Assembly: GCF_902459465.1 (NCBI RefSeq)
Contig: NC_047076.1
Span: forward strand, 1,054,001 to 1,118,000
DNA: 64,000 nucleotides
DNA from: Asterias rubens
Taxonomy: Eukaryota
Direction: 5' to 3'
Part shown: piece after piece, positions 22,565 to 63,974 of the stretch
Layout of the letters: the number at the start of each line of letters is the position of its first letter
Numbering within the stretch: position 1 is the stretch's first letter
Program-made: the position numbers and the translations under genes
Notes under the pieces: model-generated
The model's database searches: none
Seen by the model: the letters and a program-made list of their open reading frames with translations, nothing else
Told to the model about the DNA's origin: nothing

Positions 22565-34510
<11,946 letters not shown>

Positions 34511-38636: not shown

Positions 38637-41600
38637 TTAATATTGAAAACAACCTCCATGCATCTGTGATAGGTGAGCGTAGCACAGGTCACTTGTATCG
38701 AAGATAGCCAGGCAAAGCCAACATAAGTGCTTCTTACACTCAGAACAGGTCATGTGAAAGCATCCCTCAATTTTCTCGATATAGATTCCACATGGGCACT
38801 TCTTGACATCTTTTCCTTGAATCCACTTCTGAAATGCCACGTCGCTACAGTCCTTGCCATAAGCCTGTAAAAGCAGAGGAAAAAGTGCCATATAGGTGTG
38901 AACAAATTAAACACACACTCCCAAACATATACAGGTACAGCACTCCTATACAATAGAGGACACCTTTTGTACTTTCTGTTGTTCCTGTATTGAAGCAATC
39001 CCTATTGGTTTTGTACACAAATGACTACCGGTAGTGAGGACCCATGAAAACAAAGAACGGACTAGTGAGGACCTATTGCATACACACAGTCGTGTTTGAC
39101 CATTACGTTAGAGGACACCTATTGTGCTTTCTGTTGTTCCTGTATTGAAGCAATCCCTATTGGTTTTTGTACACAAATGACTAGTGAGGACTCATGAAAA
39201 CAAAGAACCGACTAGTGAGGACCTATTGCATACACACAGTCGTGTTTGTCCATTACATTAGAGGACACCTATTGTGCTTTCTGTTGTTCCTGTATTGAAG
39301 CAATCCTTATTGGTTTTGTACACAGATGACTAGTGAGGACCCATGAAAACAAAGAACCGACTAGTGAGGACCTATTGCATACACACAGTCGTGTTTGTCC
39401 ATTACATTAGAGGACACCTATTGTGCTTTCTGTTGTTCCTGTATTGAAGCAATCCTTATTGGTTTTGTACACAGATGACTAGTGAGGACACCTGAAAACA
39501 AAGTACCGACTAGTGAGGACCTATTGTCCCTTTTGTTAAATGTCCTCAGACGATGGGCAATACAAACACACACATACATGTAGCTCTGTGTTGCAGTCGC
39601 CGTGTGGACATTCCTTTAGTTCTGTACACTTAAAGGCGCTGGACACTATTGGTAATTGTCAAAGATTAGCCTTCTCAACATATGCATAAAATTACAAACC
39701 TGTGAAAATTTGAGCTCAACACGTCGTCAAAGTTGCGAGAGAATAATGAAGAAAAAAAAAACCTTGTCACACGAAGTTGTGTGCTTTCAGATGCTTGATT
39801 TCGAGACATTAAATTCTAAACTTGGGGTCTCAAAATCAAGTTCATGGAAAAATACTTCTTTGTCGAAAAATACGTCACTACAGAGGAGCCGTTTCTCACA
39901 AAATTTTATACTATCAACCTCTCCCCATTATTCAATATTTTTTTGTGGTATTTTTTAAAACTTTGGTACAAAGGCTCTTGCTAACTAGCTTTCTTCTCCT
40001 GCCTTGGATTCATTCCTTAGTTTTACTCTATCATAATTTTGTTTTGTTTTTAGAAGTCATCTGACGCTACCGTTACCTTAAATTCCTCGCATGTATATCC
40101 CATATGAGGTTCTGAACCACACGATGAACACAAACGATTCCGACACTCCTGACATGAGAAGACCCCGACATCCTTCGTTGTCTTATAGATCATGTGACAA
40201 TCTGGTGTTGGGCAAAACTTCAGTTTTCCCTCGCTCTTCTGGGTGACATGTGACTCCAGAGCCAGATCAAACAAGCGTCGTCTCTTTGTTTCATCACTGC
40301 AGAGAACACGGAAGTCGCAGAGCAACATTGGGAGGCCACATCCATCACATGGACACTCTGAAGAGATAAAGTTCAAAACATGGTCAGTAAATACGGTTCA
40401 TCTTTCTTAAAGGAACATTATATAATTGGTTTTTGCTAACAAAAAGCACCATGTAGTTGTTTACAGGGTGCTGTGGTGCAATATGAGGAACCCCTTCTCT
40501 TTAGGATAAGGGTTTTGGGTTCTTATACAAGCATTAGTCAACACACGATACCAACAGCTTTACGTCCCATCCCTCTGTTACAACACTGTTGATGGTTGTT
40601 TCATGAGATGTGTTTTGCTTTGACTAAAACAAACAAAATGTCATGAACAAAATAATTATTGTTAAGATATTTTATTTTACCAATGGGGTAATCCTTGCTA
40701 GCGTTCTGTAACCTGACGGTAAACATCTCATGAAGGCATTGAAGATGGAACCCATGGGAGCAAGCACTCAGACGATACATCTCCTCAGTGGCTTCCACTG
40801 CTGTGTAACAAATGCCGCATTCCACTTCAGTGGTTGCATCATCTCCTCCAACTCTGAAATAAAAGGAAAACAATGTTGATGTTCTGCAAGGGTTTTCATG
40901 CCAGTTTAAAGCACTGCAGCCGGTTTCGCGAAATGCTAGGATTAATCCTATCTCTAACCCGTCCTAACTTAGGTGGGTTCAATGCGTCCTGACGTCCATA
41001 GAAGTGGAACTTAACTCGTCCTGAGTCCTAAGATTAATCCTAATGTTAGGAAGAGTTTGGTGAAATCGACGGCTGGACACGTAATTGTCAAAGACCAGTA
41101 TTTCTCGTTTGGTGTATCCCAACATATGCATAAAATATCAAATCTGTGAAAATTTGGGCCCAATTGGTTATCAAACTGCAAGAAAAAATGAAAGAAAAAA
41201 CACCCTTGTTGCACAAATTTGTATGCTTTCAGATGTCTTGATCTAGCAACTAGGATGTGTGCGCTAAATAAGAACCAATGATTATTTTCTCCTCACCTGA
41301 TGGCAGCTTGTTGTCCAGCTTCTTGGAGGCAGTTTCTCACCATCTTGTGGACGTTATCAAAGACATTCTGATTGCCCTCTATAAGAAGGTTTCCTTGGCA
41401 CATGTTCAATGTTATAGCTTTGGCTCCAGTTTCTTCAACAAGTTTCTGTCAAAAAGGAAGAAAAAAGAGAATGATAAATCCTCACATCTGGGCCCAACCA
41501 CTGCCCAAAACAATTCTGCTAAGCGGAAATGAGCAGGATACCAGTCACAAAATGTACATGAGACATGGTAGTTTGGCTGATAACCTTATTTTGGTGAGCA

Positions 41601-44600
41601 AAAAGTTTTTTACGCTTAGCTACTATTTCTGCTTTATTATAAGCAGCTCTATGAAATTGGGGTCAGGGCAAAAGCACTAAATTTTGGCGTCATCAATGTT
41701 TGTGTGTACAACATCAGGGTTAGTTTCAAGAAGATTTGCAGTTCAAAAATCAGGTTACACCTTTGCACTTTTGGGACACACAAATTTTCTTTTACACATT
41801 ATTACAACAATTATTACACTGTCAATCTGTCATTGACTTTCTGCAACATTATTTTAGCTCTGAAAACCTGACCATAACATGACTGTGTTTTATTCTGACG
41901 GATCTTCTGCAAATATTATAGCTATATTTAGTCCATAGTAAGATTTCAAAGAGGGGAAAATGAAATAAATGTTTGTGATGCAACAAAGTAACTTTTCCAT
42001 CAGCAACAACAATGGACATTATTTTTGGCTTTATACAAAATATAATTCCACTAGTCCATAGTAGAAACTATTGACCAACTACTCACCTTAAGCCAAGGTC
42101 CATAAGCTTTCACTAATGCCCTTACAGCTCTCCCTTTAGTACAACCTTCAGAGAGACCTGCAGTCAATGAAATTTCTTTCAGTTGATTCTTACAGATGAT
42201 GTTGATGTAGTTCTTCACTTGCTCCTTCAAGACTTCTCTGACCTCATCCTTTCCGTAAATCACAATGAGATGGCGACGGGTGTCCACCATTGCGTGAGCC
42301 TCCAACCCGTAAGTAAGATGTCTGGGAAATGAGGTATAGAAAAAAAAGTAAGACTGTATTTTGTTTTACCTACACAGTTAAAGCCATTGGACCCTTTTGG
42401 TAAACAGTATTGTCCAAGGCCCATACTTTGTGTATCACAACTTCTATATAAAATAACACACCTGTGAAAATTTAGGCTTAATCGATCATCGGAGTCGGGA
42501 GAAAATAACGGGAAAACCCACCCTTGTATCCGCACGTTTCGCCGTGTCATGACATGTGTTTAAAATAAATCCGTAATTCTCGATATCCGGAATTGATATT
42601 GTTTTACTGTTTTCTCAAAAAGCAAAGCATTTCATGTAATAATATTTCAAGAGAAGTCTTTCACCACTACCTTCTGTAAACCCTGTAAGTTATTTGTAAA
42701 TCTGTGAATTTTTTATTTTTTTCTGTACCGAAAGGTTCCATTGGCTTTAAGCGAGCGTTCACTAACTATAGTTTGTATAGCGCAATCTTTACAATAATAG
42801 TGCCCTGGTCATTGGGCCAACAACATTTCCTTTAATCTTTCTCATCTCCCTGAGGAGTATACAGCCCGAGCTGTCATGCGCTCAGAAGGCTTTTTCATAC
42901 ACAATATCAACCTCTACCCTAGCGGGTACCCATTTATACCCCTGGGTGAAGAGAGGCCATTTTAGGATCTTGCTCAAGGACACGCGTATCACGAACTGGA
43001 TTTGAACCCATGCCCCAACGACTTAACCACCGACTTAAATTTGACGTTTGTTTATTGAGACAGAATGCTTGGGAATCATAAATACCAATTATTAAAGTGG
43101 AGCTAATCGGACAAAAACAGAATGTGGAACAAACTCCCAACTCAGTGAAGACATGCGGGACTGTTGATAATTTCAAGACCAAATTGAAAACTCATCCTAC
43201 AATAATAATATAACAATATTGAAGTCTTATAAAGCGCACGTGTCTACCAAACAAGGTACTCAAGGCGCTGAGTATATACAAACTTTCAGAAACTTACCTC
43301 AAGCCATTCTTGTGAAGTAACTTCAGAATGTGATATTTGATCTGAAATGAAACCTCCTCCTCGCACAGATCATTTAGTGATACCGTCTCGCCCCGGATGT
43401 AAGACAGAAGTTCTCGGCGTGTCCTATGAACTTCTTGGATGTTTTCACCAGCGACGTTTATCACCCAGTCATTTGTCTTCTTGCTCTTACTCACTCTGAC
43501 ATTCAAATTTCTGACTCCTTCGCTCACCTCCTCAACGAGCTTTGTGATTCTTTGCTCAATGCACTTGTAGACGTCAGGATTACAGAAGAGCATGCAAGAT
43601 GCCGTAAGCTTCACAATATAAATCTGGCCTGCCGAGTTGCGTGGAGGGTTGTCTTGAATATTCAGAATACAACCATCTACTTCATCTTCGTTGTCACACT
43701 CAAAGTTGGCGATAGCCTTCCTGCTTTGTGTTTTCTCCGATCGCGCCGACAGTATGTTGATGTCTAGTTGATCTTCTCGTAGTGTGCCTTCGAACATTTT
43801 GTAGATGTCTTGAGTGACCTGGTCGTCTTTGATAAGAATTGCTGGGGGTTGACGAGCAATACTGCATTTGACTTTTTTGCAGTCTGTATAATCTTCAATA
43901 GCTTCTTCCAGTTCTTCATTGGTTGCATCTGTGTGAACGTTTCGGAGGTACAGAGCTCTTGTGTTATTCTTTTTAAGTTGGCACTCCAATAGCTTCCCTT
44001 TGAAGTCAAAATTTTGCAAGCTTTCTTTCATTTCTAAGGCTTGGTTTGATGTGTCAAAGTTGATAAATGCTTGGCCTTTTGACGGCCAGGTGTACCATAT
44101 GACCACGATCCTTGAGCTGACTCTAGCGATATCTCTGTTTTGAAAACTACGTCCCAGAATTGGTTCGAGCTGAAGGGTGTCCTCTACTTCTAGCAGCATC
44201 TTTGTTTCCTCCGCTGTCTTGGGGGAACTGAAGGTAATGCGACCCCACTTGGCTGTAGTTTGCTTTTGAAACTTGTACACGTCAAGAATCTCATTCTGAG
44301 TGCAACAAGAAGAGAGACAAATCATCTTCAAATCATCTTCGGACATGTCTCCTGTAACATTACTGACCTCCAGGCTTCTGTAATCATTTGGCATCAAGAT
44401 GAATTTTGTCTGACCTCCTGCTACGACGACTTGACGGACAACTCCTGATTCCCCTACTGGCACTTCAATCTGTTCTCTCTGGATAGACTCCAGCTCTTCT
44501 TTGAGGAGTCTCTCAACATACGATGTTGCAAACTCGCAAATGTTCATCTTCACGAACATCTGCAACTTTTTTGTGGCTCTGTTGACCTGGATAATGCAAG

Positions 44601-47600
44601 GAGAACCTTTCACTTCTGTGATATACTCTTCCATAGCCCGGACCTTTTCATTTCTCTTTATGGTAAGACGTCTCATCACAGCAGTTCCAAGTTGGATCGC
44701 AGGAGCCTCTTGCAAAGCCATTTCTTGAAGTGCGCCCACATCAATCTCGTCATAAAACATCGGAGCAACTTCCTGAAGCCAATCGATGTTAACTCGAGTC
44801 ACATTGAAGAGGAAGCTTCGGGATGTTTGTTTGAACTCTTCATACACTACCCATTTAGGATTGCAGTCTAGTGCAACGAGAGACGAAGATGGATGGATGA
44901 ACCCGGATTTCTGATGAGGAAGAACCGTGTAACCTGCTCTTGGATGACCGTTGTATAAACTCAACGTCTGAAAGTAAGCTGACATGATGATCTTTTGAAG
45001 TGACTCAGTCTTTGCCGCATCAATGGCTTCCATCTTGTAGTCCCTTGCATTACACTCGATGTTATGTTTAAGCTTTAACACCTGGGCTGCTTCGTTAGCA
45101 GACTCTCGAACAGCTCTCAGCGTCTTGGAATTCATGCTGTTCTCCATACACCACGCCTTCTGCTTAGCCGCTGCTTTGCTATTCCAAGATCCGTAAGCTT
45201 TAAGCATTGTTATAACATCTCCACTGTCATGACAATACTTGAGCTTCAGACGGTCTGCTTTCTCTTTGTCTTTATCGGAGCCTCCTCTATAGAACAAACT
45301 TCCAGGAGCAGAGATCAAGGCAGCGATGATGACAGCTTCAGAGGTAAGATGTTTCTCTACTCCTTCAAGAATAACCTTTGAGAGACGTGGCTCCATTGGA
45401 AATGTTGCCATCTTACGACCCAAAGAGGTCAACTTATTAGCTGCATCCACGGCACCCAGCAACCTCAGGGTAGTCATAGCCTGCTGTGTAGCTTCTCGAT
45501 CAGGCGCCTGGATGAAATCAAAGTTCGCCACGTCTTCGACACCAAGCTCTAAAAGCTGCAGTGCTGCCATCCCGAGGTGAACACGCAAAATCTCCGGTTT
45601 CATCATTTCATTCAGGTCCTTATACTCTTCTTTGGTGTACAATCGATAGCAAACACCTGGGCCTGTCCTACCTGCTCGGCCCGCCCGTTGCTGAGCTGAC
45701 GCTTGAGTTATCGCTGTCACCTTCAAAAGACTCATGCTACGCTTTGGATCATATTGACACTCTTTGACAACGCCAGTGTCAATGACATATCGGATACCTT
45801 TAATAGTCACTGAGGTCTCAGCGACATTGGTTGCAAAGATTATCTTCCTTTGTCCAGCTTTTGCGTCTGCGAATACTTTCATCTGGTCTTCTGGCTGGAG
45901 TCGTCCATGAAGGGGTAGTATCAGTGCCTCTTTATCTTGGTCATCAGGTCTTTGGCCGAGGGAAGTTGATAAGTCTCGACATGCTTGTTCAATCTCATTG
46001 GCCGATGTCAAGAAGACTAGAATGTCACCTTCCTTCTCATCTCGATGCACCTGCAGAATTTAAGAAGAAAAACAAAAATCCTTTTTTAATATAAAATAGA
46101 TTTAAAATTTGCATTGGGGATGAAGAATATTAACTTAGAGAGGTTTGTGGGAACACCATGTGAAGTTTCTTTTGAGTAGTGTTGGTTCTGTAAAGAACTG
46201 GTGGTTAAAAAATTTCAGAACATACACAACTCTTGAGAGATTTACTCATGGTGTTATCGCAAATCTCTCTTAGTTATACAGTGTATTTCTACCATGCAAA
46301 GGTTCTAGTTCTACTTATAACAAGTATGTAGGGTCCGTATGCATGATTAAATGTAACTAGCATATTTCATGAAAAAAGGGCTTATTGTTTGAAACATTTT
46401 ATCATTTTAGAAGAGAACAAAAACTTTTTGTGGGAAACAATTATCATCTGAACTTTGAAAACAATTATGGACTTATCGGGTACATTTTGTTTTGCCCTTC
46501 GTTCGAGATCAAATGTACAGAATCAAAGTCATGAAAGTGACGCTAGGAGTGAGATTAGTCTGTGCATTAGAGCTTTATCATACTGCCATCTTGGTCATCC
46601 TCCCTGTATCCTAACAGCAGTAATAGGTGCTATTGTTTATTGTACAAAAAGGAACCAGACTATTTTTCCATATGGCCTCGGTTTGGTTACATTGATTTCA
46701 ATGGAAGAAAATCAAGATGGCTGCACCATGATAAAGGTCTAGATACTAGGGAAAGCCCTGTTCACACTTCCTGTGAATGCAATACAAATGTTGTCGTCAC
46801 AGCGAATAATTCGCATGTTGACTTGTGCTCAACTCCTGCAAAACATTCGCTGCGAAAATAGCCCTGTGACATCAAAATTCTAATCGTATTTACATTGGCA
46901 GGATATATGAACCGGCTTAAGCGGGGAAACCAAACACTATGGGTTTCTCACCTTTGCAGTCTGTTTGACGGCTTTCCCAACATAGTCACCCTCTCCGATG
47001 CTGACATCATCACCAATCCATCGTTTATCCACCGGAAATGTCCGACCAGGAACCTTTATCTCTTTACACTCATCGAGGTAGTTGGAGAATAAGGTGGTGT
47101 CGATTGTGGCAGACATTATGAGAAGGTGAAGATCTTTTCTGCTTCGAAGGAGTTTCTTCAGCGTTGCCAACAATATATCCGTGTCTACAGATCTCTCATG
47201 GGCCTCGTCGACGATGACGCAAGTATAGTCGGACAGATTTGGGTCGGCGATGATCAAGTTGAGGAGTTTCCGATCCGTCATGAAAGTAACAACTGTTTTG
47301 GCACTGACAGATTTCTTGTTGCCGACAAAATATCCAACTTCTTCGCTAACCTGGCATCCGTATTCTTCAGCGACACGTTTTGAAAGAGTGAGTGCCGCAA
47401 CTCTTCTAGGTTGTGTGCAAACTACCCGCCATTGTGGTCTCTGGCTGGAGCCTTCATCTTCCTGACTCTCCAGGGCCATGTCTACGAGATACTGTGGAAT
47501 CTGTGTGCTCTTTCCAGATCCTGTCTCGCCTTGCAAGACAACAGCTTTATTCCATCGCATAGCTTCCTCAATCCTAGACCTGTAGCCATAAACCGGTAGA

Positions 47601-50600
47601 GGGGAATCCAAACGACGACATTCTCTCAGAAATTGATGACGAATCTTGTGTACCTCTGACAAGGTTTGGGTTTCTGACTCTAAACCTTCCAAAGCGGTTT
47701 CAATATTAAGGCATGCGTTGTTGAACTCATCCAGGAATCTTTGTTTCTCCTCCAAATGGTGCTCATGTGTTTCGATAGAAATTTTATATCGGTGAATTTC
47801 AGCAAAGGACAGGTTTTCTTTGAAGGCGTCTCTGCAATCTGACAAATCCGAGTTGATGACTTTACATTCTTCTGTAATTTTATAGTTAATGTCATGGACT
47901 TTCTCTGGCATTTCTCTTTCTTTTAAGTCCTTCAGTACTTTTTTTGCAATGTGTGGTTCCACTTCTTCATTGTGCCAGGAGAGGACAGGTTTTATACAAT
48001 GGCCAGAGATTGGTTTCCCATAAAGCTTACAAACTGCCTCCATCGCATCTTCCCGTCTCTTAAACTTCAGAGAGCATCTCCCGGAGGCCAACACTGCGTC
48101 AACAAATCCATGACATTCCTCTCTCACAAGATATACAACATCACTCTCTGAGATGTTTCTTGGGAGATCTGTTAAGACAACTTCATTCGGACTTCTTTCC
48201 TGTGTATTATCTTTGTCTGTGCATGGTTTATATTTTGACCTTACAAGCCCGCCAGTTGTTCCCTTATCACCGTCATTTGATTCATCAGTTTTGTCACCAC
48301 TCCTCAACTGAGACCTTACATCTCCTACAGAGCTACCTTTCCCTCTATGACCACGCCCATTTCTACCTTGACCACGCCCACCTTTCTGTTCTTGCTCCCT
48401 TTCTGTGTGACGATATCCCCTTTGACTCTCCTCTTTCAAATCTTTAGTTTGTTGGGCGTCCTCAAGCCATCTCTCAACATTTACCCGACCCTCATCAGGA
48501 CCGTGACCAAGTTGTTCAACATGAAGAGACAGGCCGGACTTCTTGTTTCGGTAAGACTCTTTTGATACTGGGAAACTGGCTTTAATTGGAGTGTCATTCC
48601 CAAGACGCCACAGGTCATTGTTCAAAACACCGAAAGCTGCTGTTGCCATCTTGAGATCTGGAAACTGAAGAACAGCAAATTGGTTGTTGTGTTTTTGGGA
48701 AGGTTTCAACCCCGAGCACTGACAGTTTAAATCAAGGGACTCCAGAAAGTCATAGAATTCCGCAAGATCGAAATTCTCTCCAATATTTGTTACCCAGAGA
48801 GATGAAGACTGTTTGACTTGAGAGGAACTGGCATGACTCACCACAGTAGAGCAGATGCTCCTCACTTCACTACATTCTGATTGATTATCAGAATCTTCTC
48901 CCATTTTCTGTCGCCAGTTTCTTGTCCTCCTTCCACGGCCTCTACCTCCAAGACCTCTCCCTCCACGGCTTCTCCCTCTACGGCTGCTCTCTCCTCGATT
49001 TCTACATCCTCGACCTCTGTAGCCTTGACCCCTCCCTTCATGACTTCCTCGAGTTGCCCCTTCAGGGTATCCAGTTGCTTCAAAGGAAGGGGGATGCAAA
49101 TCTCCACTGGGGCTCGCCATAGCTTTTCGATGACTGTAGCTTACGCACATTTCAGGGCCACCCCGAAAAATCCAGCGGTTATGCAGAAAACTTTGAGCCA
49201 TATTTGTGTCCGTGACAGATGCAAAATGGATAATAGCAAATCGCCTCCCTGATTTGGAAATAAAAAAGTCTACATCTGAGAATGATATCTTTTTGTCGGA
49301 CAAGAAACGACAAAATCCATCATTGCTCACTCCGTCATCGATGTTTTTCACATGTAATGAGATTGGCTGTGATGATGTACCACTCCTCTCACTCATTCCT
49401 GATGCAATGCTGCTCTGGTCATCATCTCTATCATAAGGAATATTTGGAGCAAGAGGCATCGACATCAATGAGGGGATGTTCTTTTCAGAAGCTTGGGGCT
49501 GTCTAGGTGCCCCGATTGGATGCTGGCTTTGGTCAGCCCTCAGTTGAACATCTTGCTCAGAATGTGTCAGGCTGGGCCGGCGGTCACCTGTTGTATAACC
49601 ACCTCTTTCGTGTCCTTGATATTTGCCTCGCCCAGAGGAATCACCACAGCCAGTCTGTGAAGATTGAGGGTCATATGCCATGTATGGATCCTGGCGCGAG
49701 GGTCCGGGATGATTATCTGGCGTGTAACCACCTCTATGGTGTCCTCGATAGTTTCCTCGATAGTTTCCTCGCCCAGAGGAATTACCCCGGCCAGTCTGTG
49801 AAGTTTGATGGTCATATGCCATGTCCAAAGGTCGGTGGCGGTCATCTGGTGTGTAACCACCTCTCGGGTAACCTCGATAGTTTCCTCGCCCAGAGGAATT
49901 ACCCTGGCCAGTCTGTGAAGATCGATGGTCAACTGCCATGTCTGAAGGTCGGTGGTGGTCATCTGGTGTGTAAGCACCTCTAGGGTGACCTCGATAGTTT
50001 CCTCGCCCAGAGGAATTACCCCGGCCAGTCTGTGAAGATTGATGGTCATATGCCATGTCCGAAGGTCGGTGGCGGTCATCTGGTGTGTAACCAGATCTAG
50101 GGTGTCCTCGATAGTTTCCTCGCCCAGAGGAATTACCCCGGCCAGTCTGTGAAGATCGATGGTCAACTGCCATGTCCGAAGGTCGGTGGCGGTCATCTGG
50201 TGTGTAACCACCTCTCGGGTGACCTCGATAGTTTCCTCGCCCAGAGGAATTACCCCGGCCAGTCTGTGAAGATCGATGGTCAACTGCCATGTCCGAAGGT
50301 CGGTGGCGGTCATCTGGTGTGTAAGCACCTCTAGGGTGACCTCGATAGTTTCCTCGCCCAGAGGAATTACCGCGGCCAGTCTGTGAAGATTGATGGTCAT
50401 ATGCCATGTCTGAAGGTCGGTGGCGGTCATCTGGTGTGTAACCAAATCTAGGGTGTCCTCGATAGTTTCCTCGCCCAGAGGAATTACCCCGGCCAGTCTG
50501 TGAAGATCGATGGTCAACTGCCATGTCTGAAGGTCGGTGGCGGTCATCTGGTGTGTATCCATCTCTAGGGTGACCTTGATAGTTTCCTCGGTCAGAAGAT

Positions 50601-51739
50601 GGATGCTGGTCACTTTCTTGATGAGAATATTGGTCATGATTACGGTGACCTTGTTGATGTCTCTGGCGTTGGTCATATGAAGGAGACTGACCATCAGGAT
50701 GAACCTTGTTCTGGTGTGGATTGTTTCCATGAACAGCTGAGGATGTTTTTCCATTTTTGTTTTGTCTGGGACGACGCGATCTTTGGTCTTGTAAAAAAGC
50801 TGACAGTTTCCTGTCAGATGCTCCGATTGAGCAATTATTGAGAATCCCCTGTGCTGCAGCAGCATCTTCTTGATTTTTAAACAGAATGCTAGCTTGGCTG
50901 TTCTGTGAATCCTTCATCGACCAGTCTATATTTTGATAATTTGTGACGTTTAAGCAGCCCAGAAAAGTTTTGAATGAGTCTTGGTCAGTGCATATATTTT
51001 TCACCTGTACTTGTAACTTCAATCTCGTTGATGTTGTTTGTCTTGCAGCATTGGAAGATGAATCTTGCATCACCTTCATCGCAGCTGAAACATTTGTCTT
51101 TCCCATGCTTCCCTCTCTGTCTTCTTTGGGTAAATCTTTACCCAGACCACCTCCCCCAACTTCCTCCTCCTCCTCCTCCTCCTCCCCCTCCTCCTCATCT
51201 GCATCGGTCTCTTCTTCACTACTTGTTTCCTCCGAGGACTCAATAGAGTCACTGAACACCATCAGATCATCTTCTCCCATATTATCACAATCAGAAGATG
51301 AAATGATTGGAAAATGTTCCCTTGAAGCCATCATTAACTGTGTTGTATCACTGCTAGAATCTGCAATTAGAAGAGAGAAAAAAACAGAGCAAAAATTAGT
51401 AAATTACTAATTGCATGGCAATTATTAGCTATTATTAATAATTCTGCTACACAAGATCTGTTGCACATTTTTAAGTTACATTTTTGTTTCATAGGATGGG
51501 GATATGGTTTTAAAAGTTTGTTGGTACATCAACAATGGATGGTGTGAGATATAGCTACCCTTTTTACACTATCTACTTTTGATCCGCAGAAAATAGCAAA
51601 TAGGTATGTGGGAGGGGGGAGGGGGTGGGGGGGGTGGGGGAAGGTGGGCGCAAGGAGGGCAAGGGTTATGCCATGTTGCATCACTATATAGCCTTGGTTA
51701 ATGATAGTCTTGGTTAATGATACTCTTACCTTTCTTCAT
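38637..51739 (-). CDS. Multi-RRM / RG-repeat / DEAH-box RNA helicase / RBR E3 ubiquitin ligase fusion (plant DEAH11/DEAH12-like), copy 1, ~2,740 aa
   Basis: Exons 51739-51730 (probable MKKD start; alternative ATG at 51334), 51360-46952, 46050-43298, 42321-42087, 41445-41297, 40853-40681, 40357-40077 and 38864-38637 sum to 8238 nt with consistent phases. GETGSGKST, TQPRRVAA, DEAH, SAT, ATNVAETS, QRAGRAGR, HA2-like and OB-like regions, RING1 (CGIC...CSHGFHLQC), IBR (CPTPDC...CQEC...CSSC...H...C) and RING2 with catalytic GCFH. Confidence 0.92.
38955..39527. repeat. Minisatellite, ~3.8 units of 149-155 bp, in the last intron of helicase-RBR copy 1
   Basis: AGAGGACAC unit starts at 38955, 39110, 39260 and 39409. 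Each unit contains GACTAGTGAGGAC twice. Confidence 0.9.
42378..42750. mobile_element. MITE family B copy (inverted)
   Basis: TTAAAGCCATTGGAC...CCATTGGCTTTAA; reverse complement of 1230-1603. Confidence 0.85.
42885..43275. mobile_element. SINE (tRNA head with central-domain-like body, - strand) followed by an L2 LINE 3' remnant
   Basis: Minus strand GGGTTCAAATCC...GTGTCCTTGAGCAAG...CACCCAGGGGTATAAATGGGTACCC, with the same body at 28825-28880. WNKL...FKTKLKTH at 43125-43200. The (AAT)n-led tail is shared with 10790-10850. Confidence 0.6.
49600..50590 (-). repeat. Coding tandem repeat, ~8 units of 117 bp (39 aa), in the helicase-RBR N-terminus
   Basis: GATAG anchor at 49759, 49876, 49993, 50110, 50227, 50344, 50461 and 50578 (exact 117-nt period). 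Unit DDRHRPSDMAVDHRSSQTGRGNSSGRGNYRGHPRGGYTP. Confidence 0.97.
51610..51665 (+). other. Putative G-quadruplex motif in the first coding intron of the helicase-RBR gene
   Basis: More than four G3+ tracts with short loops: GGGAGGGGGGAGGGGGTGGGGGGGGTGGGGGAAGGTGGG. Confidence 0.55.
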
Positions 51740-55613: not shown

Positions 55614-55927
55614 TTAAAGACCCTGGACACTTTTGGTTTGAGCTCAATTGGTCGTCGAAGTTGCAAGATAATAATGGAAGAAAAAACACATTGTCACCAA
55701 TGTTGTGTGCTTTCAGATGCTCGATTTCGAGACCTCAAATTCTAAATCTAAGGTCCCAAAATCAAAGTCGCTGAAAATTACTTCTTTCTCGAAAACTACG
55801 TCACTTCAGAGGGAGCCATTTCTCACAATGTTGTATACTATCAACCTCTACCCATCACTTGTTACCAAGTTAGGTTTTATGCTAATAATTATTTTGAGTA
55901 AGTACCAATAGTGTCCATTGCCTTTAA
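55614..55927. mobile_element. MITE family A copy (internally deleted), next to a tRNA-SINE at 55455-55575
   Basis: TTAAAGACCCTGGACAC...ACCAATAGTGTCCATTGCCTTTAA. Confidence 0.8.
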
Positions 55928-56605
55928 TAGTCGCTCTTTCCACCTCACAGATCACTTACAGTAATCTCACCCTCCCAATTATGCAATAAATTCATAAAAA
56001 ATTCTACATAGATTTTCTCTAAACAACATTTTTCTGTTCTGATCTAGAAAGAAGACATGGACACATTGTGTGTGAACGTTTTACAACAAGCAAGCTGCGT
56101 CAGTTTGAAGACCTCAGTAATATTGCTACCTATGGTTTCCGTGGTGAGGTAAGCAAATCCAAACTTGTTTAAACTTTTATCACGGATGTGATTTCTCAAA
56201 TTTTAAATAAAAATCACTTCTTTTTTTTTCATTTCATTTTATTCACCAGCAAACATGAACAAAACTAAAAACTGCACAATCAAAGATCTACAAAAACAAA
56301 CAATACAATACTTTAAGAAGAATACAAAAATACATACGAGCAGATACATGTTGTAGGAACAACCTCCAGTTGGGTTTGTGGTGCACTCAAAGAATTGGAA
56401 ACAAAATGAAAGAACAAAAGAACCCTGACAGGATACTATAGACCTTATGTGCACATGACATCATTTGTGTGGAGTCCTTGTCTAGAGGTCAAAAGGAGGT
56501 TGATCATTGGTCCACCCTCTCCGTGCATAGGTGTGTGTTTTCCATTGTTGCATCATTGTTTGACCTCTAAGATGGGGGCGTGATTATGTCAATTCATAAT
56601 ATAAG

Positions 56606-56727
56606 TTATCACACAAGCGCAAGTGGAATACGGAAAAATATAGGTATCTGCGTCCCATATCCAACGAGGCTGTATGGGACGCAGACACGCTGTATTTTTC
56701 CGTATTCCACGAGCGCGCGTGTTATAA
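56606..56727. repeat. Long imperfect palindrome, third member of the hairpin-element class
   Basis: GTGGAATACGGAAAAATA...TCTGCGTCCCATA / TATGGGACGCAGA...TATTTTTCCGTATTCCAC, with centre CCAACGAGGC. Confidence 0.65.
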
Positions 56728-57733
56728 CGAATTTATCTTCAAGTTTCACGTGCAACGGCAAAGTTTAAAATTTCAGAACGTTATTTCGCGATGAACAGCA
56801 TGTAAGCGCACAAAGTTTAGAATGCAACTTTTGCACTGTCTGTTTATGGAGCGTGACGCGTTGACATTCACAATACGCACTGTGCATTAAAAACAGAGGA
56901 AGTAGTATTATAGGTTTTTATACCACTGCCAGTTCAATCATCTGATTGTTGGATTAGCGCGTACTGGAAGGTAAAGTATCATTAACCTGGTGTTGTTTTT
57001 ATTGTCCTCAAGGCTCTAGCAAGTATTAGTCACGTTGCCCATGTTATGATCACAACCAGAACTGAAGAATCTAAGTGCGCTTTAAGTATTCTCAAATAGT
57101 ACAAGTTTTATTACCTCTGTAAATTCTATCGTCTAACTTGGTTCAATTCATTTATGATCAGTGATGTTTGAAGCTTTGCATGGTGTGGATAATACAGGAA
57201 CAAGATAGGTCAGACTTTTATTCGAGTTTAGATATTTAAAAGTCTACCTGGGCCCAATTTCATAGAGCTGCTAAGCACAAAAATTTGCTTAGCATGAAAT
57301 TTTTGCCTTGATAGTGCTCTTTGGTAGTGAAGTTAGTAGCTATCCAATATAAGCTAAAGAAGTAGTCCTGGCCAATTTTCTATCTTCCGCTATTAAAACT
57401 TATATGTATACATGTCCATCTCAAAAAAGCTAAGCCTTTTGTGGGAAGGGTGGTGATAATTAAAAGAGCTATTTGTGAATTTATGAAAGTTATGAATTTA
57501 ATATTTATGTATGACTAAAAACTACCTTTGTACTTAAATTTTCTTTTTTTAACACAATTTTTAAAAATAAATAAAAAAACGACCGTGGATTTCTGACTTT
57601 TTTGGTCGGTCGGAAAAGGGCAATAAACAGTTTTTTTTATTTATGCCTTAGGCTATATGTTGGGATACACAAAGTGAAAATACAGGTCTTTGACAATTAC
57701 TAATGAAACTTCTTCTCTCGTCTATTTCCTCAG

Positions 57734-57963
57734 ATTATAATCATCGCATCAGTCGTACTGGTCGTGCCGGTAAAACAGGAACAGCTATTACTTTCCTGAC
57801 CCAAGACGACAGCGAGGTCTTCTACGATCTCAAGCAGATTCTTCAAGGAAGTCCGATCTCAACATGTCCACCGGAGCTCGCTAATCATCCAGAAGCCCAA
57901 AATAAACCCGGTACCGTCATGAACAGGAAGAAAAGGCAGGAGGAAACCATCTTTGCTAACTAA
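57734..57963 (+). pseudogene. DDX23: Orphan duplicate of DDX23 terminal exon
   Basis: 6 nt differences in 230 from 34281-34510. [11 protein letters not shown] becomes [11 protein letters not shown]. No upstream DDX23 exons in this unit. Confidence 0.9.
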
Positions 57964-60900
57964 CCCCAGACCTGGAATTTCGCAGAGGCCATGAACTTGT
58001 TGCCCCTGGGGCGGATTTCACAAAGAGTTTAGATTGACCTTAACTGCGAATCAATCTTGAATGCTTAGCAAAGTGTGATGCCACAATACTAACTACTCTG
58101 GTAATACTGACAAATGAATCTTTCAAAATGAAAATGGCCTTGCCCTACTCAAAGATGAAATTCCAGTCCTGTAACACTAACCAAAGCAGATATATTTCAC
58201 GTTTCACTGTAACTAACTCATCAAACTACAACAGCACATTTTGTTTTATTCTGTTGGGTGGAGGACTATACTCGTAAACTGTTCATGCTTTACATGGAAT
58301 CAGGCATACCACCACAATCAGAGTCCAACAGTTTGGGTGTTGAGTTACTGAATGGTGTTGGACTGAGGACTGCACTAGTAAACTGATGATGCTTTACATG
58401 GGATCAGGCAAACCACCATAATCAGAGTCCAACAGTTTGGGTGTTGAGTTATCATCTAGTGTTTGTTTTTGTTTAAGTGAGGAAGGATCCTTAAGGTGTG
58501 GTCTTTATCTCTTTTTCTCGAGGAAAGGAGTTTAAGAGATTCTTTTAACTATATCTTTCTGTTCATGAAACCAAAGGACCATCCGAAGCGACTAGCGCTG
58601 CGACTATAAAACCTGAAACTATAGGCCTTTTCACACTTCAAAAAATCTCTGTGTTGGACACGGATACGATCCAGATAATGTGCACTGACCTTTTCACACT
58701 ACAACTTATTAACACGTTGTCGATCCGGATATGGTGCATTATCCGTGTCGAAACCAACCCTGCCCAGGAGGTGGGTTGAAAAATCTCTATCCGTGTCGAA
58801 GATTCCAACACGGATCGAAAGCCGTAGTGTGAACACCTCCGGGTTAATTTTCGATCCGTATTGAGGATAAGCAAACAACAGCCGAGTACCAGTAACAAGC
58901 AATATGCAATAAATGGACATTTGATTGGTAATCCTGTTTTTATCAAGGAAGAAATTTCATGCTAAGCAAATTTTTGTGCTTAGCATCTCTTTGAAATTGG
59001 GCCCAGGTAGGGACTGAAAACCCAATCCACATGCAAGGCTCCAGTCTGAGGTAGGATTCGAACCGGGGTCCACAGGTGTGAAAGTCAGGGGAAGAAACAA
59101 CTAAGCCAATCTCAATTTTGGTTACTACAAGAAGGAATCAGATTTACTTATAAGCTGTGTTCTTTAATCATAGAATCAATTTGAGTTAGCATGGAGTACA
59201 TGTAATTCATAAGCAATTAATCAAAATGGAAGAAATATTCTCGAAAAATTTACAATGGAATTGTTGTTAAATACGGATTCTTATTATTAAACTAGCAACT
59301 GGCTAAACATATCTCATAATACATTGTTTATGAGTCATTTATTTGTGGAGCCATGTATTAATACGGCGATTTTGGCTACAGCTACCGCTAGATTGCCCGC
59401 ATCTGCCTATTCTTAAACACTGGCAGACGCGCTGATCTAGCCAAAGCTGTAGCCGGTACGGACACGGCCTAATAACGGCTCTTTTCCATGGCAAAAACGG
59501 CCTTACTCAAAAAATGACGTTTTGGGAAAAGCAAGTACAGAGATCAGTTGTTTTGCCATAAAACAGGACAAAATGTAAAGAGGCGGAGATAGGGCATGTT
59601 ATAATCACATCCATGCATAGTATGCATTTGAAATTTTAAAATGGAAATTCCCTCAACTTACCTAGAAATGATCTTATATACGAAACAAAAATGTTCACTA
59701 CGCACTCAAACAAAAGTTTCTCACAGAGCTTGAACAAAAACAAACATTTATAAAATGAAGGAAAAAAAACAACATCATGATCATGTCACTGCACGGTTTC
59801 ACATACCTGGGCCCAATTTCATGGCTCTGCTATACAGTAAGCAAAGAATCGGCTCTTACAAAAGTAGGGAATCCCGTGCTTAAGTCAAGCTAGGTAAGTT
59901 TTGCTAGTGTGTGTTCTAATTCCATGCTATAAGGCATTCTTCGCTTACACAGCTTGTGCAGAAATTCAGCGCTTGCACAGTAAGCTGAGAATGGTGATCG
60001 TAAGCGCACAATTCAACGTTAAGCAGAGCCATGATATCGGGCCCCGTTCAGTTGAAACGTAATAGCCATAACATGGTATTTTATTTAGCAGCCGCCCAAT
60101 TTCTGCCAATAGCAGTCTTTTTAAAGCTATGAAAAGTTCAACCAAATGCATTTGGTTGCTAAACCTACAAGCGTTGCTTGAGACTATAATACTCTAGTAT
60201 TTTTCGTAAATAACACTGTTAAATTATACCTTCCAGTTAAGTATTTCATGTCACAACATTGATGAATTCTGTTTAAAATTGTTTATAATTGAGATCGAAT
60301 TCCTAAAAACATGAAGATAAAACCATATTAAAGGCCCCTGATTTCAGAGTAGGGTTTTTAAAACCAAAGATAGATGTACATGTATGTAAGAAGGCTTCGT
60401 GCTTGCAAGTTTTTACGCTTTGCGCTCACAGTTCAGGTGTTTTTTGGAACAGCCTATCACATCCCTGATTATTCTTCAATGTTACTCAAAATACATTTAT
60501 TTAAAGATGAGTTAATATAACTTTGAGGAACAACAAAAATAGCTCTATTTTAAGTACCAATGTTCTTTTTCTCCAATTGATAATAATTTAATTATACAAA
60601 CATTTTAAATTTGTTAATAATACCAACATATTTTCAGGCAATACTTTAGAACAGTTATAACTGAGCTAAAAGATTTCATATAATGAGCTTAAACATACTA
60701 TTAATCCTTTTGCTTTTGTGCATACACTTATTTTAATCTTGTATAATTTCAGTTACTCTACATTTACGCCTTCTTCCAGAACTCATCCGTGGCTTTTTGC
60801 CTGATTTTGATGATTTTCAGAATGGCTTTACACCTGTTTCAGAGAGGCGCTCCAGAGTCTCGCCAAATCAAATTCTGAATTACGTACACGAAAAGTTTGA

Positions 60901-61172
60901 CGTCTAAAACAGTTGGGAGTGACTGGACAAGCGACAGGTCAAAAGAACGACTTTTGCAGTCGTTCAGAACAACTCTGGAGCACCTTGGTTTCAGACGTTG
61001 ATGTTGTCATGAGCCAAACAAATGTTATGTTATAAAAATAAAACCAAAATTTATTTGGGTTAGACTTGTAGTCACTCCTACTTTGGTTCAGCGTGACTCT
61101 GGCGCGCATGTCTGAAACTATGCTCTATTCAACTATGCTCTGGATTTTAGCTTGGTGTTTACTTGACTAAAA

Positions 61173-63974
61173 TTAAAAAAAACCACCATGCTTCTCTGAT
61201 AGGTGATCGTAGCACATTTTGCTTCTATCAAAGAATTCCAGGCAATGCCAACAGATGTGCTTCTTACATTCACGACACTTTATGTGAAAACATCCTCCAT
61301 TTTTCTCGATAGGGATTCCACAGTTTGGTACTGGACACCTCTTGACATCTTTTCTTTTAATCCATTTCTCAAATGCCAAGTCGTCAAAGTTCTTGCCGGA
61401 AGCCTGCAAGAGGAAAAAAGTGGCACGGGCATAAAAACACAAACACACACCCGAAACGCAAACACTGTTGCACACACAGCTGTGGGGACGAAATGTTTAG
61501 GCTTTGCGTGTTTTGTACTTTCAAATTTTACCGACTTAAATTAAATTTCTTTTAAAGATTTTGCTTTTTTTTTTTCTATAAATATTTTTTTAATATTTCA
61601 GCTAGTGTTTTACAATTTTCTTTCCTGAAGGTACCAAGTTGACGGAGAAAAACCTCGTGTGGACCATTGATCCATTGTGTAAATGTCCCCACAGCTAAGT
61701 ATATGCCATAGCCATACATGTAGCTGCAGCTGCTAAAGTATTTGTTGATCAAATTATCACAAATACAGTTGAGCGGACTCGACACTGCTGAATATTTTAT
61801 GAAGGATTTGGGCACTTTTTGTAGCACAAAACATAATGTCCACAGATTTACGCTAAACTTACACGGTTTGAAGATAATGATGGAAGAAAGCATACCTTAA
61901 AATATTACCTGCTGAGGTGCTGCATTTTTGGGGGAAATGAGTAAAAAAGTGTCACAAAAATACATTATACATGCTAAAATAATTTTCATCTCCTGAGACA
62001 AAAACTATTTTTTTTGACTTGTTTGATGTAAATCTGTGGACATTGTGTTTTGTGTCTTACAAAAAGTACCCGACTCTTTAATCAGAAACATATTATACAA
62101 GTGTTTGTTTCATTTCATTTTGTGTTTTTAGTTTTGGAGGAGCCAGTTCTCAATTCTTAAGCATGGCAGGTACACCTCTGTGTGAAATACAAAATATGTA
62201 CACATTCAATATTTTTTCACGGCATTGATCTGAAACAACGACTCTTGCTTGCTCGTTTTTTCTCCTGCCTTTGATACTGGTCTTGTTAATGTTTAGTTTA
62301 ACTCAACCACATTATTTTGTTTCCAGAAGTCATCTGTCGCTACCGTTACCTTAAACTCCACGCATGTATATCCCATATGAGGTTCTGAACCACACGAAGA
62401 ACACAAACGGTTCCGACACTCCGGACATAAGAAGACCCCGGCATCCTTTGTCGTCTTATAGATCATGTGACAATCAGGTGTTGGGCAAAACTTCAGTTTT
62501 CCCTCGCTCTTCTGGGTGACATGTGACTCCAGGGCCAGATCGAACAAGCGTCGTCTCTTTGTTTCATCGCTGCAGAGAACACGGAAATCGCAGAGCAACA
62601 TTGGGAGGCCACATCCTTCGCATGGACACTCTGAAGTTTAAAACATAGTCAGTAAGAAATACCATTCATCTTTCTTGTCTACCAATTACTGGACAGAGGG
62701 TAGCTTCTCATTTGTCCACAATGTGATTTGAATTGTCATTGAGCTCGGCGAGATATTAATAATAATAATAATTATCAAATAATAAACCACAAGGGAAACT
62801 GACTGGGTACATTTTTTAAACGATAATAATTATATAAATTTATACCACGCTTTATGCTACGTTTCTAAGCGCATGGTGCTGGTGTCCTTGAAGACTATAG
62901 TAAACCAGGGCAACAGCACCAAATATAAAGAACATTATATTAATACTAGGTTATAGCACTTTATCCCACCCTAGGAGTGTATCAAAGCGTTCAGTATTTT
63001 TTCCTGCAAAGTATGTGGAGCTACATTTTGAAGTATGAGACCTTTTCCTTTAAAGCACCATGTAATTGTTTACAGGGTGCTGTGGTGCAATATGAGGAAC
63101 CCCTTCTCTTTAGGATAAGGGTTCTGGGTTCTTATACAAGCATTACTCAACACACGACACCAACGGCTTTAAGTCCTGTCCCTCTGTCTGTCCCTCTGTT
63201 ACAGCACTGTTGATGGTTGTTTGAGGATATGACACTTAGCTTTGACTCAAACAAAATGTCATGAACCAAATAATTATCGTTAAGATATTGTGTTTTACCA
63301 ATGGGGTAATCCTTGCTAGCGTTCTGTAACCTGACGGTAAACATCTCATGAAGGCATTGAAGATGGAACCCATGGGAGCAAGCACTCAGACGATACACCT
63401 CCTCAGTGGCTTCCACTGCTGTGTAACAAATGCCGCATTCCACTTCAGTGGTTGCATCATCTCCTCCAACTCTGAAATAAAAGGAAAACAATGTTGATGT
63501 TCTGCAAGGGTTTTCATGTCTGTTATTAAAAGCACTGCAGCCGATTTCACGAAACGTTAGGATTAATCCTATCTCAAGTTAGAACAAGTAACCCGTCCTA
63601 ACATAGGATGGGTTCAATGCGTCCTAACGTCTTCAGATACAGAACTTAACTCATCCTAATGTCCTAAGATTAATCCTAATGTTAGGAAGAGTTTGCTGAA
63701 ATCGACGGCTGGAGAAATTTTGGCTCAATCAGTAATCGAAGTTGCAAGAAAACTCTTTGCACAAACTTGTGTACTTCTACAAGGATGTGTGCGCTAAATA
63801 AGAACCAATGATTATCTTTCCTCACCTGATGGCAGCTTGTTGTCCAGCCTCTTGGAGGCAGTTTCTCACCATCTTATGGGCGTTATCAAAGACGTTCTGA
63901 TCGCCCTCTATGAGAAGGTTACCTTGGCGCATGTTCAGTGTTATTGCTTCGGCTCCAGTTTCTTCAACAAGTTT
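61173..63974 (-). CDS. DEAH helicase-RBR E3 ligase, copy 2, last four exons (5' part beyond the window)
   Basis: Exons 63974-63826, 63471-63299 (RING1), 62630-62350 (IBR) and 61403-61173 (RING2, CPVPNC...EKNGGCFHIKC). Open frames, intact GT-AG sites and the same phases as copy 1. Confidence 0.9.
61805..62080. mobile_element. MITE family F copy, present only in unit 2
   Basis: CAAAACATAATGTCCACAGATTTA / TAAATCTGTGGACATTGTGTTTTG; related to 9575-9990. Confidence 0.7.

What the first reader, a model, noticed from the sequence alone, without database searches (positions are those of the whole stretch)
38637..61403. The catalytic RING2 exon has diverged far faster than the rest of the duplicated ligase
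Hand count, copy 1 versus copy 2. RING2 exon: 26 of 73 aligned residues differ (~64% identity), 42 nt differences of which 35 fall in replacement codons, plus a 3-codon indel. IBR exon: 5 aa and 16 nt of 281, mostly synonymous. RING1 exon: 1 nt. All Zn ligands and the catalytic GCFH are kept. Synonymous divergence is roughly similar in RING2 and IBR, so the excess is amino-acid change. Inference: positive selection or module swapping on the catalytic domain, either changing substrate or chain specificity or escaping a pathogen antagonist.
Basis: seen in the sequence. Interest (0 to 1): 0.8.

Follow-up and report, generated by a model that had tools for sequence, protein, structure and literature searches.

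The report
Old divergence island at duplicated RING2
Two neighbouring copies of a starfish helicase-ubiquitin-ligase gene are kept alike over most of their length by gene conversion, but a 1.5-kb block holding the catalytic RING2 exon has stayed apart since before two Asterias species split; its protein changes look weakly constrained, and adaptive change is not shown.

Summary
Copy 1 versus copy 2 shows 42 nt and 26 aa differences in RING2, 16 nt and 5 aa in IBR, and 1 nt in RING1. There is a 3-codon indel, and every Zn ligand and the catalytic Cys-x-His are kept.

The window is Asterias rubens. The genes are two annotated tandem 'DEAH12-like' helicase-RBR ligases.

The contrast between exons is mostly regional. 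Intron 6, exon 7 and about 140 nt of 3'UTR form an island. Non-coding DNA inside it is 76% identical between copies, against 92% elsewhere (p = 6e-14).

A. amurensis has both RING2 types, so the split predates that speciation. The gene body (window about 44200-50600) shows concerted evolution. RING1 was converted recently in A. rubens only.

RING2 omega is 0.56-0.64 pairwise and 0.71 by ML, not different from 1. IBR omega is 0.2. The site model gives no significant positive selection (p = 0.21). Only the copy-1 tips (9 replacement, 0 silent changes) are borderline (p = 0.047).

Replacements sit at positions that vary across the family. Both copies are transcribed and spliced, and both fold confidently.

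Positive selection is possible but not shown. A module swap is not excluded. The scan has two other first-reader notes on this same stretch.

The parts
38637..38864 (-). Copy 1 RING2 (Rcat) exon, last coding exon including the stop; CPC first zinc knuckle
   Evidence: Exact threading of XP_033639547.1 (P0128) on the window. Acceptor cag|GCT at 38865/38864. A 609-nt RNA contig covers 38297-38863 with 1 mismatch in runs X1 and X2.
61173..61403 (-). Copy 2 RING2 exon including the stop; CPVPNC knuckle, the form shared with other sea stars
   Evidence: The spliced translation matches the C-terminus of XP_033639552.1 (P0122) shown; the whole protein was threaded on the A. rubens record L004. RNA runs X2 and X1 hold 0.95 and 0.79 of its 31-mers. 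Acanthaster and contig L005 also have CPVPNC.
38500..40076 (-). Divergence island in copy 1: intron 6, exon 7 and about 140 nt of proximal 3'UTR. The counterpart in copy 2 is about 61038-62349.
   Evidence: Non-coding identity inside is 76.1% (213/280) against 91.9% outside (2289/2490), p = 6e-14. Only the first 58-109 nt of intron 6 align between paralogues. The same island is present in A. amurensis.
40077..40357 (-). Copy 1 IBR exon (copy 2: 62350-62630)
   Evidence: 16 nt and 5 aa differences, omega 0.11. ML omega 0.205, well below 1.
40681..40853 (-). Copy 1 RING1 exon (copy 2: 63299-63471); recently converted in A. rubens
   Evidence: The two copies differ by 1 nt in A. rubens and by 12 changes (Sd 9, Nd 3) in A. 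amurensis. There are 8 sites where only A. amurensis copy 2 differs.
44200..50600 (-). Zone of concerted evolution in the gene body (most of exons 1 and 2, and intron 1)
   Evidence: In the four-way genomic alignment, sites that group paralogues within a species outnumber sites that group orthologues. Codons 300-2000 show the same. Paralogue dS is 0.063-0.099 and orthologue dS is 0.067-0.115.
38640..51334 (-). Copy 1 coding range, start codon to last codon. Seven coding exons: 46952-51334, 43298-46050, 42087-42321, 41297-41445, 40681-40853, 40077-40357, 38640-38864.
   Evidence: Exact threading of P0128. Pfam finds RRM, DEAD, Helicase_C, HA2, OB_NTP_bind, RBD_DEAH11, KH_DEAH11, zf-RING_11 and IBR.
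34204..41471 (.). Part of the tandem duplicate that is visible twice in the window (partner 57657-64000, offset about 22.5 kb)
   Evidence: Self-BLAST and global alignment. Copy 2 continues beyond the window (locus L004).

Best explanation
Two tandem, full-length, expressed helicase-RBR ubiquitin-ligase genes of Asterias rubens exchange sequence by interlocus gene conversion.

Conversion has kept most of the gene body alike. It continued after the split from A. amurensis in exons 1-2. It acted before that split in exons 3-6 and the downstream flank, and very recently on RING1 in A. rubens.

A block of about 1.5 kb (intron 6, the RING2 exon and the start of the 3'UTR) has not been converted. 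It therefore keeps the oldest divergence of the pair. The two intron 6 copies share almost no alignable sequence and hold different repeat insertions. This probably blocks conversion tracts from the 5' side. That step is inferred.

Inside the block, about one third of RING2 codons are strictly conserved: the Zn ligands, the IEK motif, G-C-x-H, CW and CY-HL-HGG. The rest change at close to the neutral rate in both copies.

The products share one RNA-binding helicase body but carry different catalytic Rcat surfaces. Copy 1 has a shortened first zinc knuckle. Whether that difference is used functionally is not shown.
For: Old island:
- Non-coding identity is 76% inside the island and 92% outside.
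- Orthologue identity inside the block is normal at 92-99%, so this is not a mutation hot spot.
- Exon 7 dS is 0.335-0.38 between paralogues and 0-0.05 between orthologues.
- 36 of 225 exon 7 sites are fixed between paralogues and shared across species.

Gene conversion:
- Concerted-type sites dominate codons 300-2000 and window 50600-44200.
- RING1 differs by 1 nt between copies in A. rubens and by 12 changes in A. amurensis.

Both copies functional:
- Spliced IBR-to-RING2 contigs of both types occur in both species.
- Copy 2 exon words are held at 0.95 and 0.79 in RNA runs X2 and X1.
- All ligands and the catalytic Cys-His are invariant.
- The AF2 models have mean pLDDT 86.8 and 87.0, with RING2 blocks at 84-97.
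- The copy 1 model matches solved RBR ligases at probability 1.0.

Weak constraint rather than demonstrated adaptation:
- ML omega is 0.71, and omega = 1 is not rejected (p = 0.30).
- M1a fits 36% of sites at omega 0 and 64% at omega 1. M2a is not better (p = 0.21).
- The one-ratio log-likelihoods agree with iqtree2.
- Changed sites have mean family conservation 0.30, against 0.66 at unchanged sites.
- Stem lengths are similar for the two lineages: 0.335 against 0.21 + 0.10.
Against: - An island of paralogue-specific sites flanked by homogenised DNA is the signature Teshima and Innan proposed for selection that protects a new function from conversion (PMC2588116). A purely neutral escape is therefore not the only reading.
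- The copy 1 RING2 has 9 replacement and 0 silent differences between the two Asterias species. The test of omega free against omega = 1 gives p = 0.047.
- The RING2/IBR rate ratio inside Asterias (omega 0.71 against 0.205) exceeds the long-term dN ratio to Acanthaster of about 1.5.
- Exon 7 dS is not significantly above the pooled dS of exons 3-6. That is my arithmetic on the counts: about 11/39 against 32/177. The age difference therefore rests mainly on the non-coding flanks.
Confidence: 0.6

Rival explanations
1. Adaptive divergence. RING2 of one or both copies acquired a different acceptor, chain or partner specificity, or is escaping an antagonist. Selection both drives the replacements and removes conversion tracts that would erase them, which creates the island.
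For: - The island is internal to the duplicate and has homogenised DNA on both sides. This matches the Teshima-Innan signature (PMC2588116).
- Copy 1 tips show 9 replacement to 0 silent changes, p = 0.047 against omega = 1.
- Orthologue RING2 counts of 15 to 2 against 9 to 25 in RING1+IBR give p = 5e-5.
- M2a places 24.5% of sites at omega 3, clustered after the catalytic Cys and in the C-terminal helix.
- Both copies are expressed.
Against: - Pairwise omega is 0.56-0.64.
- The M2a against M1a test gives p = 0.21.
- The exon is not more diverged than its non-coding flanks.
- Changes sit at family-variable columns.
- Only five ingroup sequences are available, and the borderline branch test is uncorrected for the several tests run.
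Confidence: 0.25
2. Module swap. The duplication is younger (paralogue dS about 0.15-0.2, as in exons 3-6). The RING2 block of one copy was overwritten by a more distant third paralogue before the Asterias species split.
For: - The block has sharp limits on both sides and a different tree. In exon 7, copy 1 lies outside copy 2 plus contig L005: dS 0.35-0.43 against 0.22-0.25. In exon 6, L005 lies outside all four Asterias sequences.
- Extra, oddly built copies of this module do exist in a related genome. L005 lacks intron 6 and has a replaced N-terminal part.
Against: - No donor was found. The word-based search seeded from the Acanthaster RBR found only the two Asterias clusters. The exhaustive HMMER search showed nothing between the 63% hit and hits at 45% or less, apart from L005 and an IBR fragment.
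- Polarity against Acanthaster is roughly symmetric, as expected for an old split within one pair.
- Whole Asterias genomes could not be searched with these tools, so absence of a donor is weak evidence.
Confidence: 0.1
3. Decay. One RING2, most plausibly copy 1 with its C-P-C knuckle, is catalytically dead and drifting, and the gene survives for its helicase part.
For: - A C-x-C spacing for one zinc site is unusual, and omega is near 1.
- One RNA contig in run X3 carries a change at 38657 that would create a stop six codons early.
Against: - All nine Cys/His ligand and catalytic codons are intact in both species. Divergence at the other positions reaches 26 of about 46 replaced.
- M1a needs 36% of sites at omega 0.
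- The exon is spliced and expressed in two species.
- The model confidence equals that of copy 2.
Confidence: 0.05

Closest known systems
Helicase subfamily of RBR ubiquitin ligases (Arabidopsis DEAH11/DEAH12 type; Marin 2010, PMC2904391)
   Same: Same architecture: DEAH helicase core with HA2 and OB domains, RBD_DEAH11, KH_DEAH11, then RING1-IBR-RING2 at the C-terminus. NCBI names both genes 'DEAH12, chloroplastic-like'.
   Different: The sea-star proteins have a long N-terminal low-complexity part with 39-residue tandem repeats. They are present as a tandem pair. No function has been tested in any animal as far as the searched papers show.
Solved RBR ligases ARIH2, HHARI/ARIH1, HOIL-1, RNF216, HOIP and Parkin
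   Same: The copy 1 RBR model aligns over about 200 columns at probability 1.0 and 20-31% identity. It has the same ligand pattern, with the catalytic Cys followed by His at +2.
   Different: There is no Ariadne, LDD or other domain after RING2; the protein ends 10-12 residues after the last ligand. The first RING2 knuckle is C-x4-C in copy 2 and C-x-C in copy 1, where the family has C-P-x-C.
Island of divergence between duplicates under gene conversion (Teshima and Innan test; Osada and Innan 2008, PMC2588116)
   Same: A cluster of paralogue-specific sites shared by two species, surrounded by concerted or homogenised sequence, in a duplication that predates the speciation.
   Different: Here the island also covers an unalignable, repeat-filled intron. 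That intron could block conversion without any selection. Omega inside the island is not above 1.

Membership tests
RBR (RING-between-RING) E3 ligase | RING1 with a C3HC4 ligand set | tested here: met
   zf-RING_11 scores 29.6 and 28.0 bits against a cut-off of 27. C12, C15, C31, H33 and C39 are among the invariant columns in 41 homologues.
RBR (RING-between-RING) E3 ligase | IBR domain between the two RINGs | tested here: met
   PF01485 scores 47.8 bits in copy 1 and 61.9 bits in copy 2, against a cut-off of 24.3.
RBR (RING-between-RING) E3 ligase | RING2/Rcat with eight Zn ligands and a catalytic Cys followed by His at +2 | tested here: met
   C174, C176, C186, C191, C194, C199, C202, C212 and H215 are invariant in copy 1. 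G-C-F-H is present in both copies. IBR_1 is below its cut-off on its own: 23.4 and 25.9 bits against 27.
RBR (RING-between-RING) E3 ligase | Fold matches solved RBR modules | tested here: met
   Foldseek top hits are ARIH2, HHARI, HOIL-1, RNF216, HOIP and Parkin, with E from 7e-12 to 1e-8 and probability 1.0. Model pLDDT is 86.8.
RBR (RING-between-RING) E3 ligase | E2-to-Cys thioester transfer activity | not testable with these tools
   Needs biochemistry.
Helicase RBR subfamily (DEAH11/12-like) | DEAH helicase core plus the DEAH11-type RBD and KH domains on the same chain as the RBR | tested here: met
   DEAD, Helicase_C, HA2_N, HA2_C, OB_NTP_bind and KH_DEAH11 are above their cut-offs in both copies. 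RBD_DEAH11 scores 29.5 bits in copy 2 and 28.3 in copy 1, against a cut-off of 28.4.
Duplicates under interlocus gene conversion with an island of divergence | Sites that group paralogues within a species (concerted type) in part of the gene | tested here: met
   In exons 1-2, 42 concerted-type sites against 60 orthologue-type and 16 of the third type. Concerted sites dominate codons 300-2000 and window 50600-44200.
Duplicates under interlocus gene conversion with an island of divergence | A cluster of paralogue-specific sites shared across species, with low-divergence DNA on both sides, that is not a mutation hot spot | tested here: met
   Exon 7 has 36 such sites in 225 nt. Flanks are 76% identical inside and 92% outside. 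Orthologue identity in the block is 92-99%.
Duplicates under interlocus gene conversion with an island of divergence | The island is maintained by selection for a new function | tested here: inconclusive
   Omega is 0.71. M2a against M1a gives p = 0.21. Copy 1 tips give p = 0.047. The unalignable intron 6 offers a neutral barrier.
Positively selected domain (omega above 1) | dN/dS significantly above 1 for the exon, for a class of sites or for a branch | tested here: not met
   Pairwise omega is 0.56-0.64. The exon-wide ML value of 0.71 is not different from 1. The site test is not significant. One branch test is borderline and uncorrected.

The most novel reading that the evidence does not exclude
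The two tandem helicase-RBR ligases are an RNA-sensing effector pair. Their shared sensor body is kept identical by gene conversion. Their catalytic Rcat domains are held apart by selection, and copy 1 (C-P-C knuckle, 9 replacement and 0 silent changes between congeners) is under continuing adaptive change, for example against a pathogen antagonist or towards a new acceptor.
Probability: 0.2. Interest if true: 0.6.

Novelty: new member of a known kind. Interest (0 to 1): 0.35.

Why it matters
The case shows how exon-by-exon comparison of young tandem duplicates can mislead. A fast-looking catalytic exon here is largely an old block inside a gene that conversion keeps young elsewhere.

It also gives a clean natural pair for testing what the RING2 surface of a helicase-RBR ligase specifies. 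The two proteins share a nearly identical helicase, RING1 and IBR but have Rcat domains 64% identical. This RBR subfamily has no tested function in animals that I could find.

If selection does maintain the island, it would be an animal example of neofunctionalisation confined to the catalytic module of an E3.

Tried and rejected
- Searching the protein collection with the copy 1 RING2 exon alone found only its own ORF, because of the length window.
- Full threading of the Acanthaster protein failed, and the locus holds runs of N. I did not fill them and used only the three RBR exons, cut at their splice sites.
- I could not identify the species of contig L005 (GCA_014845345.1); a paper search found nothing.
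- Acanthaster is saturated at silent sites, which makes the split between the copy 1 and copy 2 stems unstable. In that run the copy 1 omega hit the upper bound. I therefore relied on the five-taxon unrooted analysis.
- My first impression was that nearly all changes lie on the copy 1 lineage, using L005 as outgroup. I dropped this because L005 groups with copy 2, and polarity by Acanthaster is roughly symmetric.
- High 'paralogue-specific' densities in introns 2-3 of the four-way alignment came from non-homologous repeat insertions. HSP-based identities there are 89-94%.
- The structure tools return no coordinates, so variable sites could not be mapped in 3-D and Cys-Cys distances in the C-P-C knuckle could not be measured.
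- 'One copy unexpressed' was rejected.
Full report
**What is there**

The window carries a large gene on the minus strand with seven coding exons: 46952-51334, 43298-46050, 42087-42321, 41297-41445, 40681-40853, 40077-40357 and 38640-38864. They thread exactly onto Asterias rubens XP_033639547.1 (P0128, 2733 aa).

Pfam finds RRM, DEAD, Helicase_C, HA2, OB_NTP_bind, RBD_DEAH11 and KH_DEAH11, followed by RING1, IBR and RING2. This is the known 'Helicase' subfamily of RBR ligases (PMC2904391).

A second copy lies about 22.5 kb away. The stretch 34204-41471 is repeated at 57657-64000. Only the RBR exons of that copy fall inside the window. The rest was fetched as locus L004 and threads onto XP_033639552.1 (P0122, 2645 aa).

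A. amurensis has orthologues of both copies in the same order (P0123 and P0125; loci L002 and L003).

**The observation**

RING2 has 42 nt and 26 aa differences, IBR has 16 nt and 5 aa, and RING1 has 1 nt. The 3-codon indel is CPVPNC in copy 2 against CPC in copy 1.

All Zn ligands, the catalytic Cys and the following His are kept. Nei-Gojobori omega is 0.59 for RING2 and 0.11 for IBR.

**The contrast is regional, not exon-specific**

A sliding comparison shows that low identity is not limited to the exon. Non-coding DNA next to RING2 (proximal 3'UTR and both alignable ends of intron 6) is 76.1% identical between copies. Non-coding DNA elsewhere in the duplicate is 91.9% identical (Fisher p = 6e-14). 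The exon itself is 80.3% identical, so it is no more diverged than its flanks.

Only the first 58-109 nt of intron 6 align between paralogues, whereas introns 2-5 are 89-94% identical in their alignable parts.

The same island is seen in A. amurensis. Orthologue identity inside it is 92-99%, so a local mutation hot spot is excluded.

The island is internal to the duplicate. Downstream of about 38500 the two copies are again about 90-94% identical wherever they align, apart from short lower-identity patches next to indels and repeat insertions.

**Gene conversion elsewhere in the gene**

In the codon alignment of the four genes, paralogue dS in exons 1-6 (0.085 and 0.108) equals orthologue dS (0.066 and 0.108). 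In exon 7, paralogue dS is 0.335-0.38 and orthologue dS is 0-0.05.

Informative sites that group paralogues within a species dominate codons 300-2000 and window 50600-44200. The two ends of the gene support orthology.

RING1 differs by 1 nt between copies in A. rubens but by 12 changes in A. amurensis. Eight sites there have only A. amurensis copy 2 differing, which indicates a recent conversion in A. rubens.

Three layers therefore exist:
- a body still under concerted evolution;
- a 3' part and downstream flank last homogenised before the species split, with paralogue divergence about 0.06-0.12 in non-coding DNA;
- the RING2 island, with divergence about 0.29.

Exon 7 dS is higher than in the region of codons 2200-2710 (p = 0.03). 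It is not significantly above exons 3-6 pooled, by my arithmetic on the counts. The age claim therefore rests chiefly on the flanks.

**Expression**

RNA-derived contigs of two A. rubens runs cover copy 1 from 38297 to 38863 with one mismatch, and the contigs run on beyond the exon's 5' end. The copy 2 exon is held at 0.95 and 0.79 of its words in the same runs.

In a second species, one contig joins the IBR exon to a copy-1-type RING2. Another joins it to a sequence too diverged to align with copy 1, followed by the shared 3'UTR.

The nine differences of the copy-1-type contig inside the exon are exactly the nine differences between the A. rubens and A. amurensis genomes. Both copies are thus transcribed and spliced in both species.

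**Selection tests**

I wrote a GY94-F3x4 likelihood. Its one-ratio log-likelihoods match iqtree2: -636.62 against -636.66 for exon 7, and -620.40 against -620.41 for exon 6. The taxa were five: both copies of both Asterias species, plus contig L005 from another sea-star assembly with one extra T of a T-run left out as an insertion column.

Results:
- Exon 7 omega is 0.71 and is not different from 1 (p = 0.30).
- Exon 6 omega is 0.205 and is far below 1.
- A three-ratio model fits better than one ratio (p = 0.043). The copy 1 tips are unbounded (9 replacement, 0 silent), the paralogue branch is 0.69 and the copy 2 clade is 0.47.
- Copy 1 tips against omega = 1 give p = 0.047, uncorrected.
- M1a fits 36% of codons at omega 0 and 64% at omega 1. 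M2a adds 24.5% at omega 3 but is not significantly better (p = 0.21).

Between orthologues, RING2 has 15 replacement and 2 silent changes, against 9 and 25 in RING1+IBR (p = 5e-5). The relaxed or accelerated regime is therefore continuing in both copies.

**Which residues change**

In an alignment of 41 RBR modules of this subfamily, the sites that differ between the copies have mean family conservation 0.30. Unchanged sites have 0.66. Only two moderately conserved columns differ (Ile/Leu in K-H-I-C-W, and Phe/Cys in H-G-G-F), and copy 2 has the family residue at both.

Acanthaster polarises a few changes to each lineage:
- copy 1: Q167, L198 and loss of VPN;
- copy 2: R168, N183, K190, R208 and E218.

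Stem lengths with Acanthaster as outgroup are similar: 0.335 against 0.31.

AlphaFold models of both RBR modules are equally confident (pLDDT 86.8 and 87.0, RING2 blocks 84-97). The copy 1 model matches ARIH2, HHARI, HOIL-1, RNF216, HOIP and Parkin.

**Reading**

The RING2 exon sits in an old island that gene conversion has not touched, inside a tandem pair that conversion otherwise homogenises. Within the island the zinc scaffold and catalytic dyad are under strict constraint. The remaining two thirds of positions change at about the neutral rate in both copies.

This pattern is what Teshima and Innan proposed as a signature of selection protecting a new function from conversion (PMC2588116). 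The same paper warns that locally diverged regions of low functional importance give false positives.

Here the repeat-filled, unalignable intron 6 offers a neutral barrier. None of the omega tests, apart from one borderline branch, shows adaptation.

My odds are:
- escape from conversion plus weak constraint: 0.6;
- selection-driven divergence: 0.25;
- swap from a third paralogue: 0.1;
- decay of one RING2: 0.05.

**Limits**

- Only five ingroup sequences and 75 codons were available.
- The Asterias genomes could not be searched for further copies.
- The species of L005 is unknown.
- No model coordinates were available for 3-D mapping.
- The N run at 29403-29539 lies outside the finding and was left untouched.

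Noticed in passing
window 61173-61181 (copy 2 C-terminus) versus L003: The A. rubens copy 2 tail reads GGT GGT TTT TTT TAA. A. amurensis copy 2 has GGT GGT TGT TTT GAA TTT TAA. A Cys-to-Phe change and a Glu-to-stop change shorten the A. rubens protein by two residues. Tail length differs in every sequence compared.
   Followed up: partly
window 38657 (copy 1 RING2 codon 70), run X3: One RNA contig of the second species carries C>A on the plus strand. This would turn GGA into TGA and end the copy-1-type protein six residues early. It is absent from run X5 and from the A. amurensis genome. It may be a polymorphism or an assembly error.
   Followed up: partly
L005:309-1190 (GCA_014845345.1, JACSEG010010527.1): This contig is from another assembly, presumably a sea star. 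Its IBR and RING2 are contiguous (no intron 6) although intron 5 is present. Its RING2 is copy-2-like with one extra T in a T-run that shifts the frame. An acidic low-complexity ORF replaces the first half of RING1. It may be a partly processed or rearranged extra copy. The species was not identified.
   Followed up: partly
window 34250-34510 and 57703-57963 (+ strand): The last exon of a DEAD-box helicase gene on the plus strand lies inside the duplicated segment. I judged the gene DDX23/PRP28-like by eye and ran no family search. Its other exons lie at about 25350-33880. A stray copy of the terminal exon therefore sits between the two ligase genes.
   Followed up: partly
window 38944-39526 and 39552-39939 (intron 6 of copy 1): There is a tandem repeat of about 150 nt (four units). 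Next to it is an interspersed repeat with very high depth in all four RNA-derived runs (10^5-10^6 summed word depth). Related copies lie at 224-617, 10253-10626, 41081-41242 and 55637-55927. Neither has an alignable counterpart in intron 6 of copy 2.
   Followed up: partly
window 49579-50639 (exon 1): A 117-nt (39-residue) tandem repeat of 8-9 units encodes the motif 'SQTGRGNSSGRGNYRGHPRGGYTPDDRHRPSDMA.DH'. Exon 1 differs in length between copies and species: 4383, 4113, 4359 and 4110 nt.
   Followed up: no
window 40681-40853 / 63299-63471: The RING1 exon differs by 1 nt between copies in A. rubens but by 12 changes in A. amurensis. This indicates a recent lineage-specific conversion tract, probably from copy 1 into copy 2.
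   Followed up: yes
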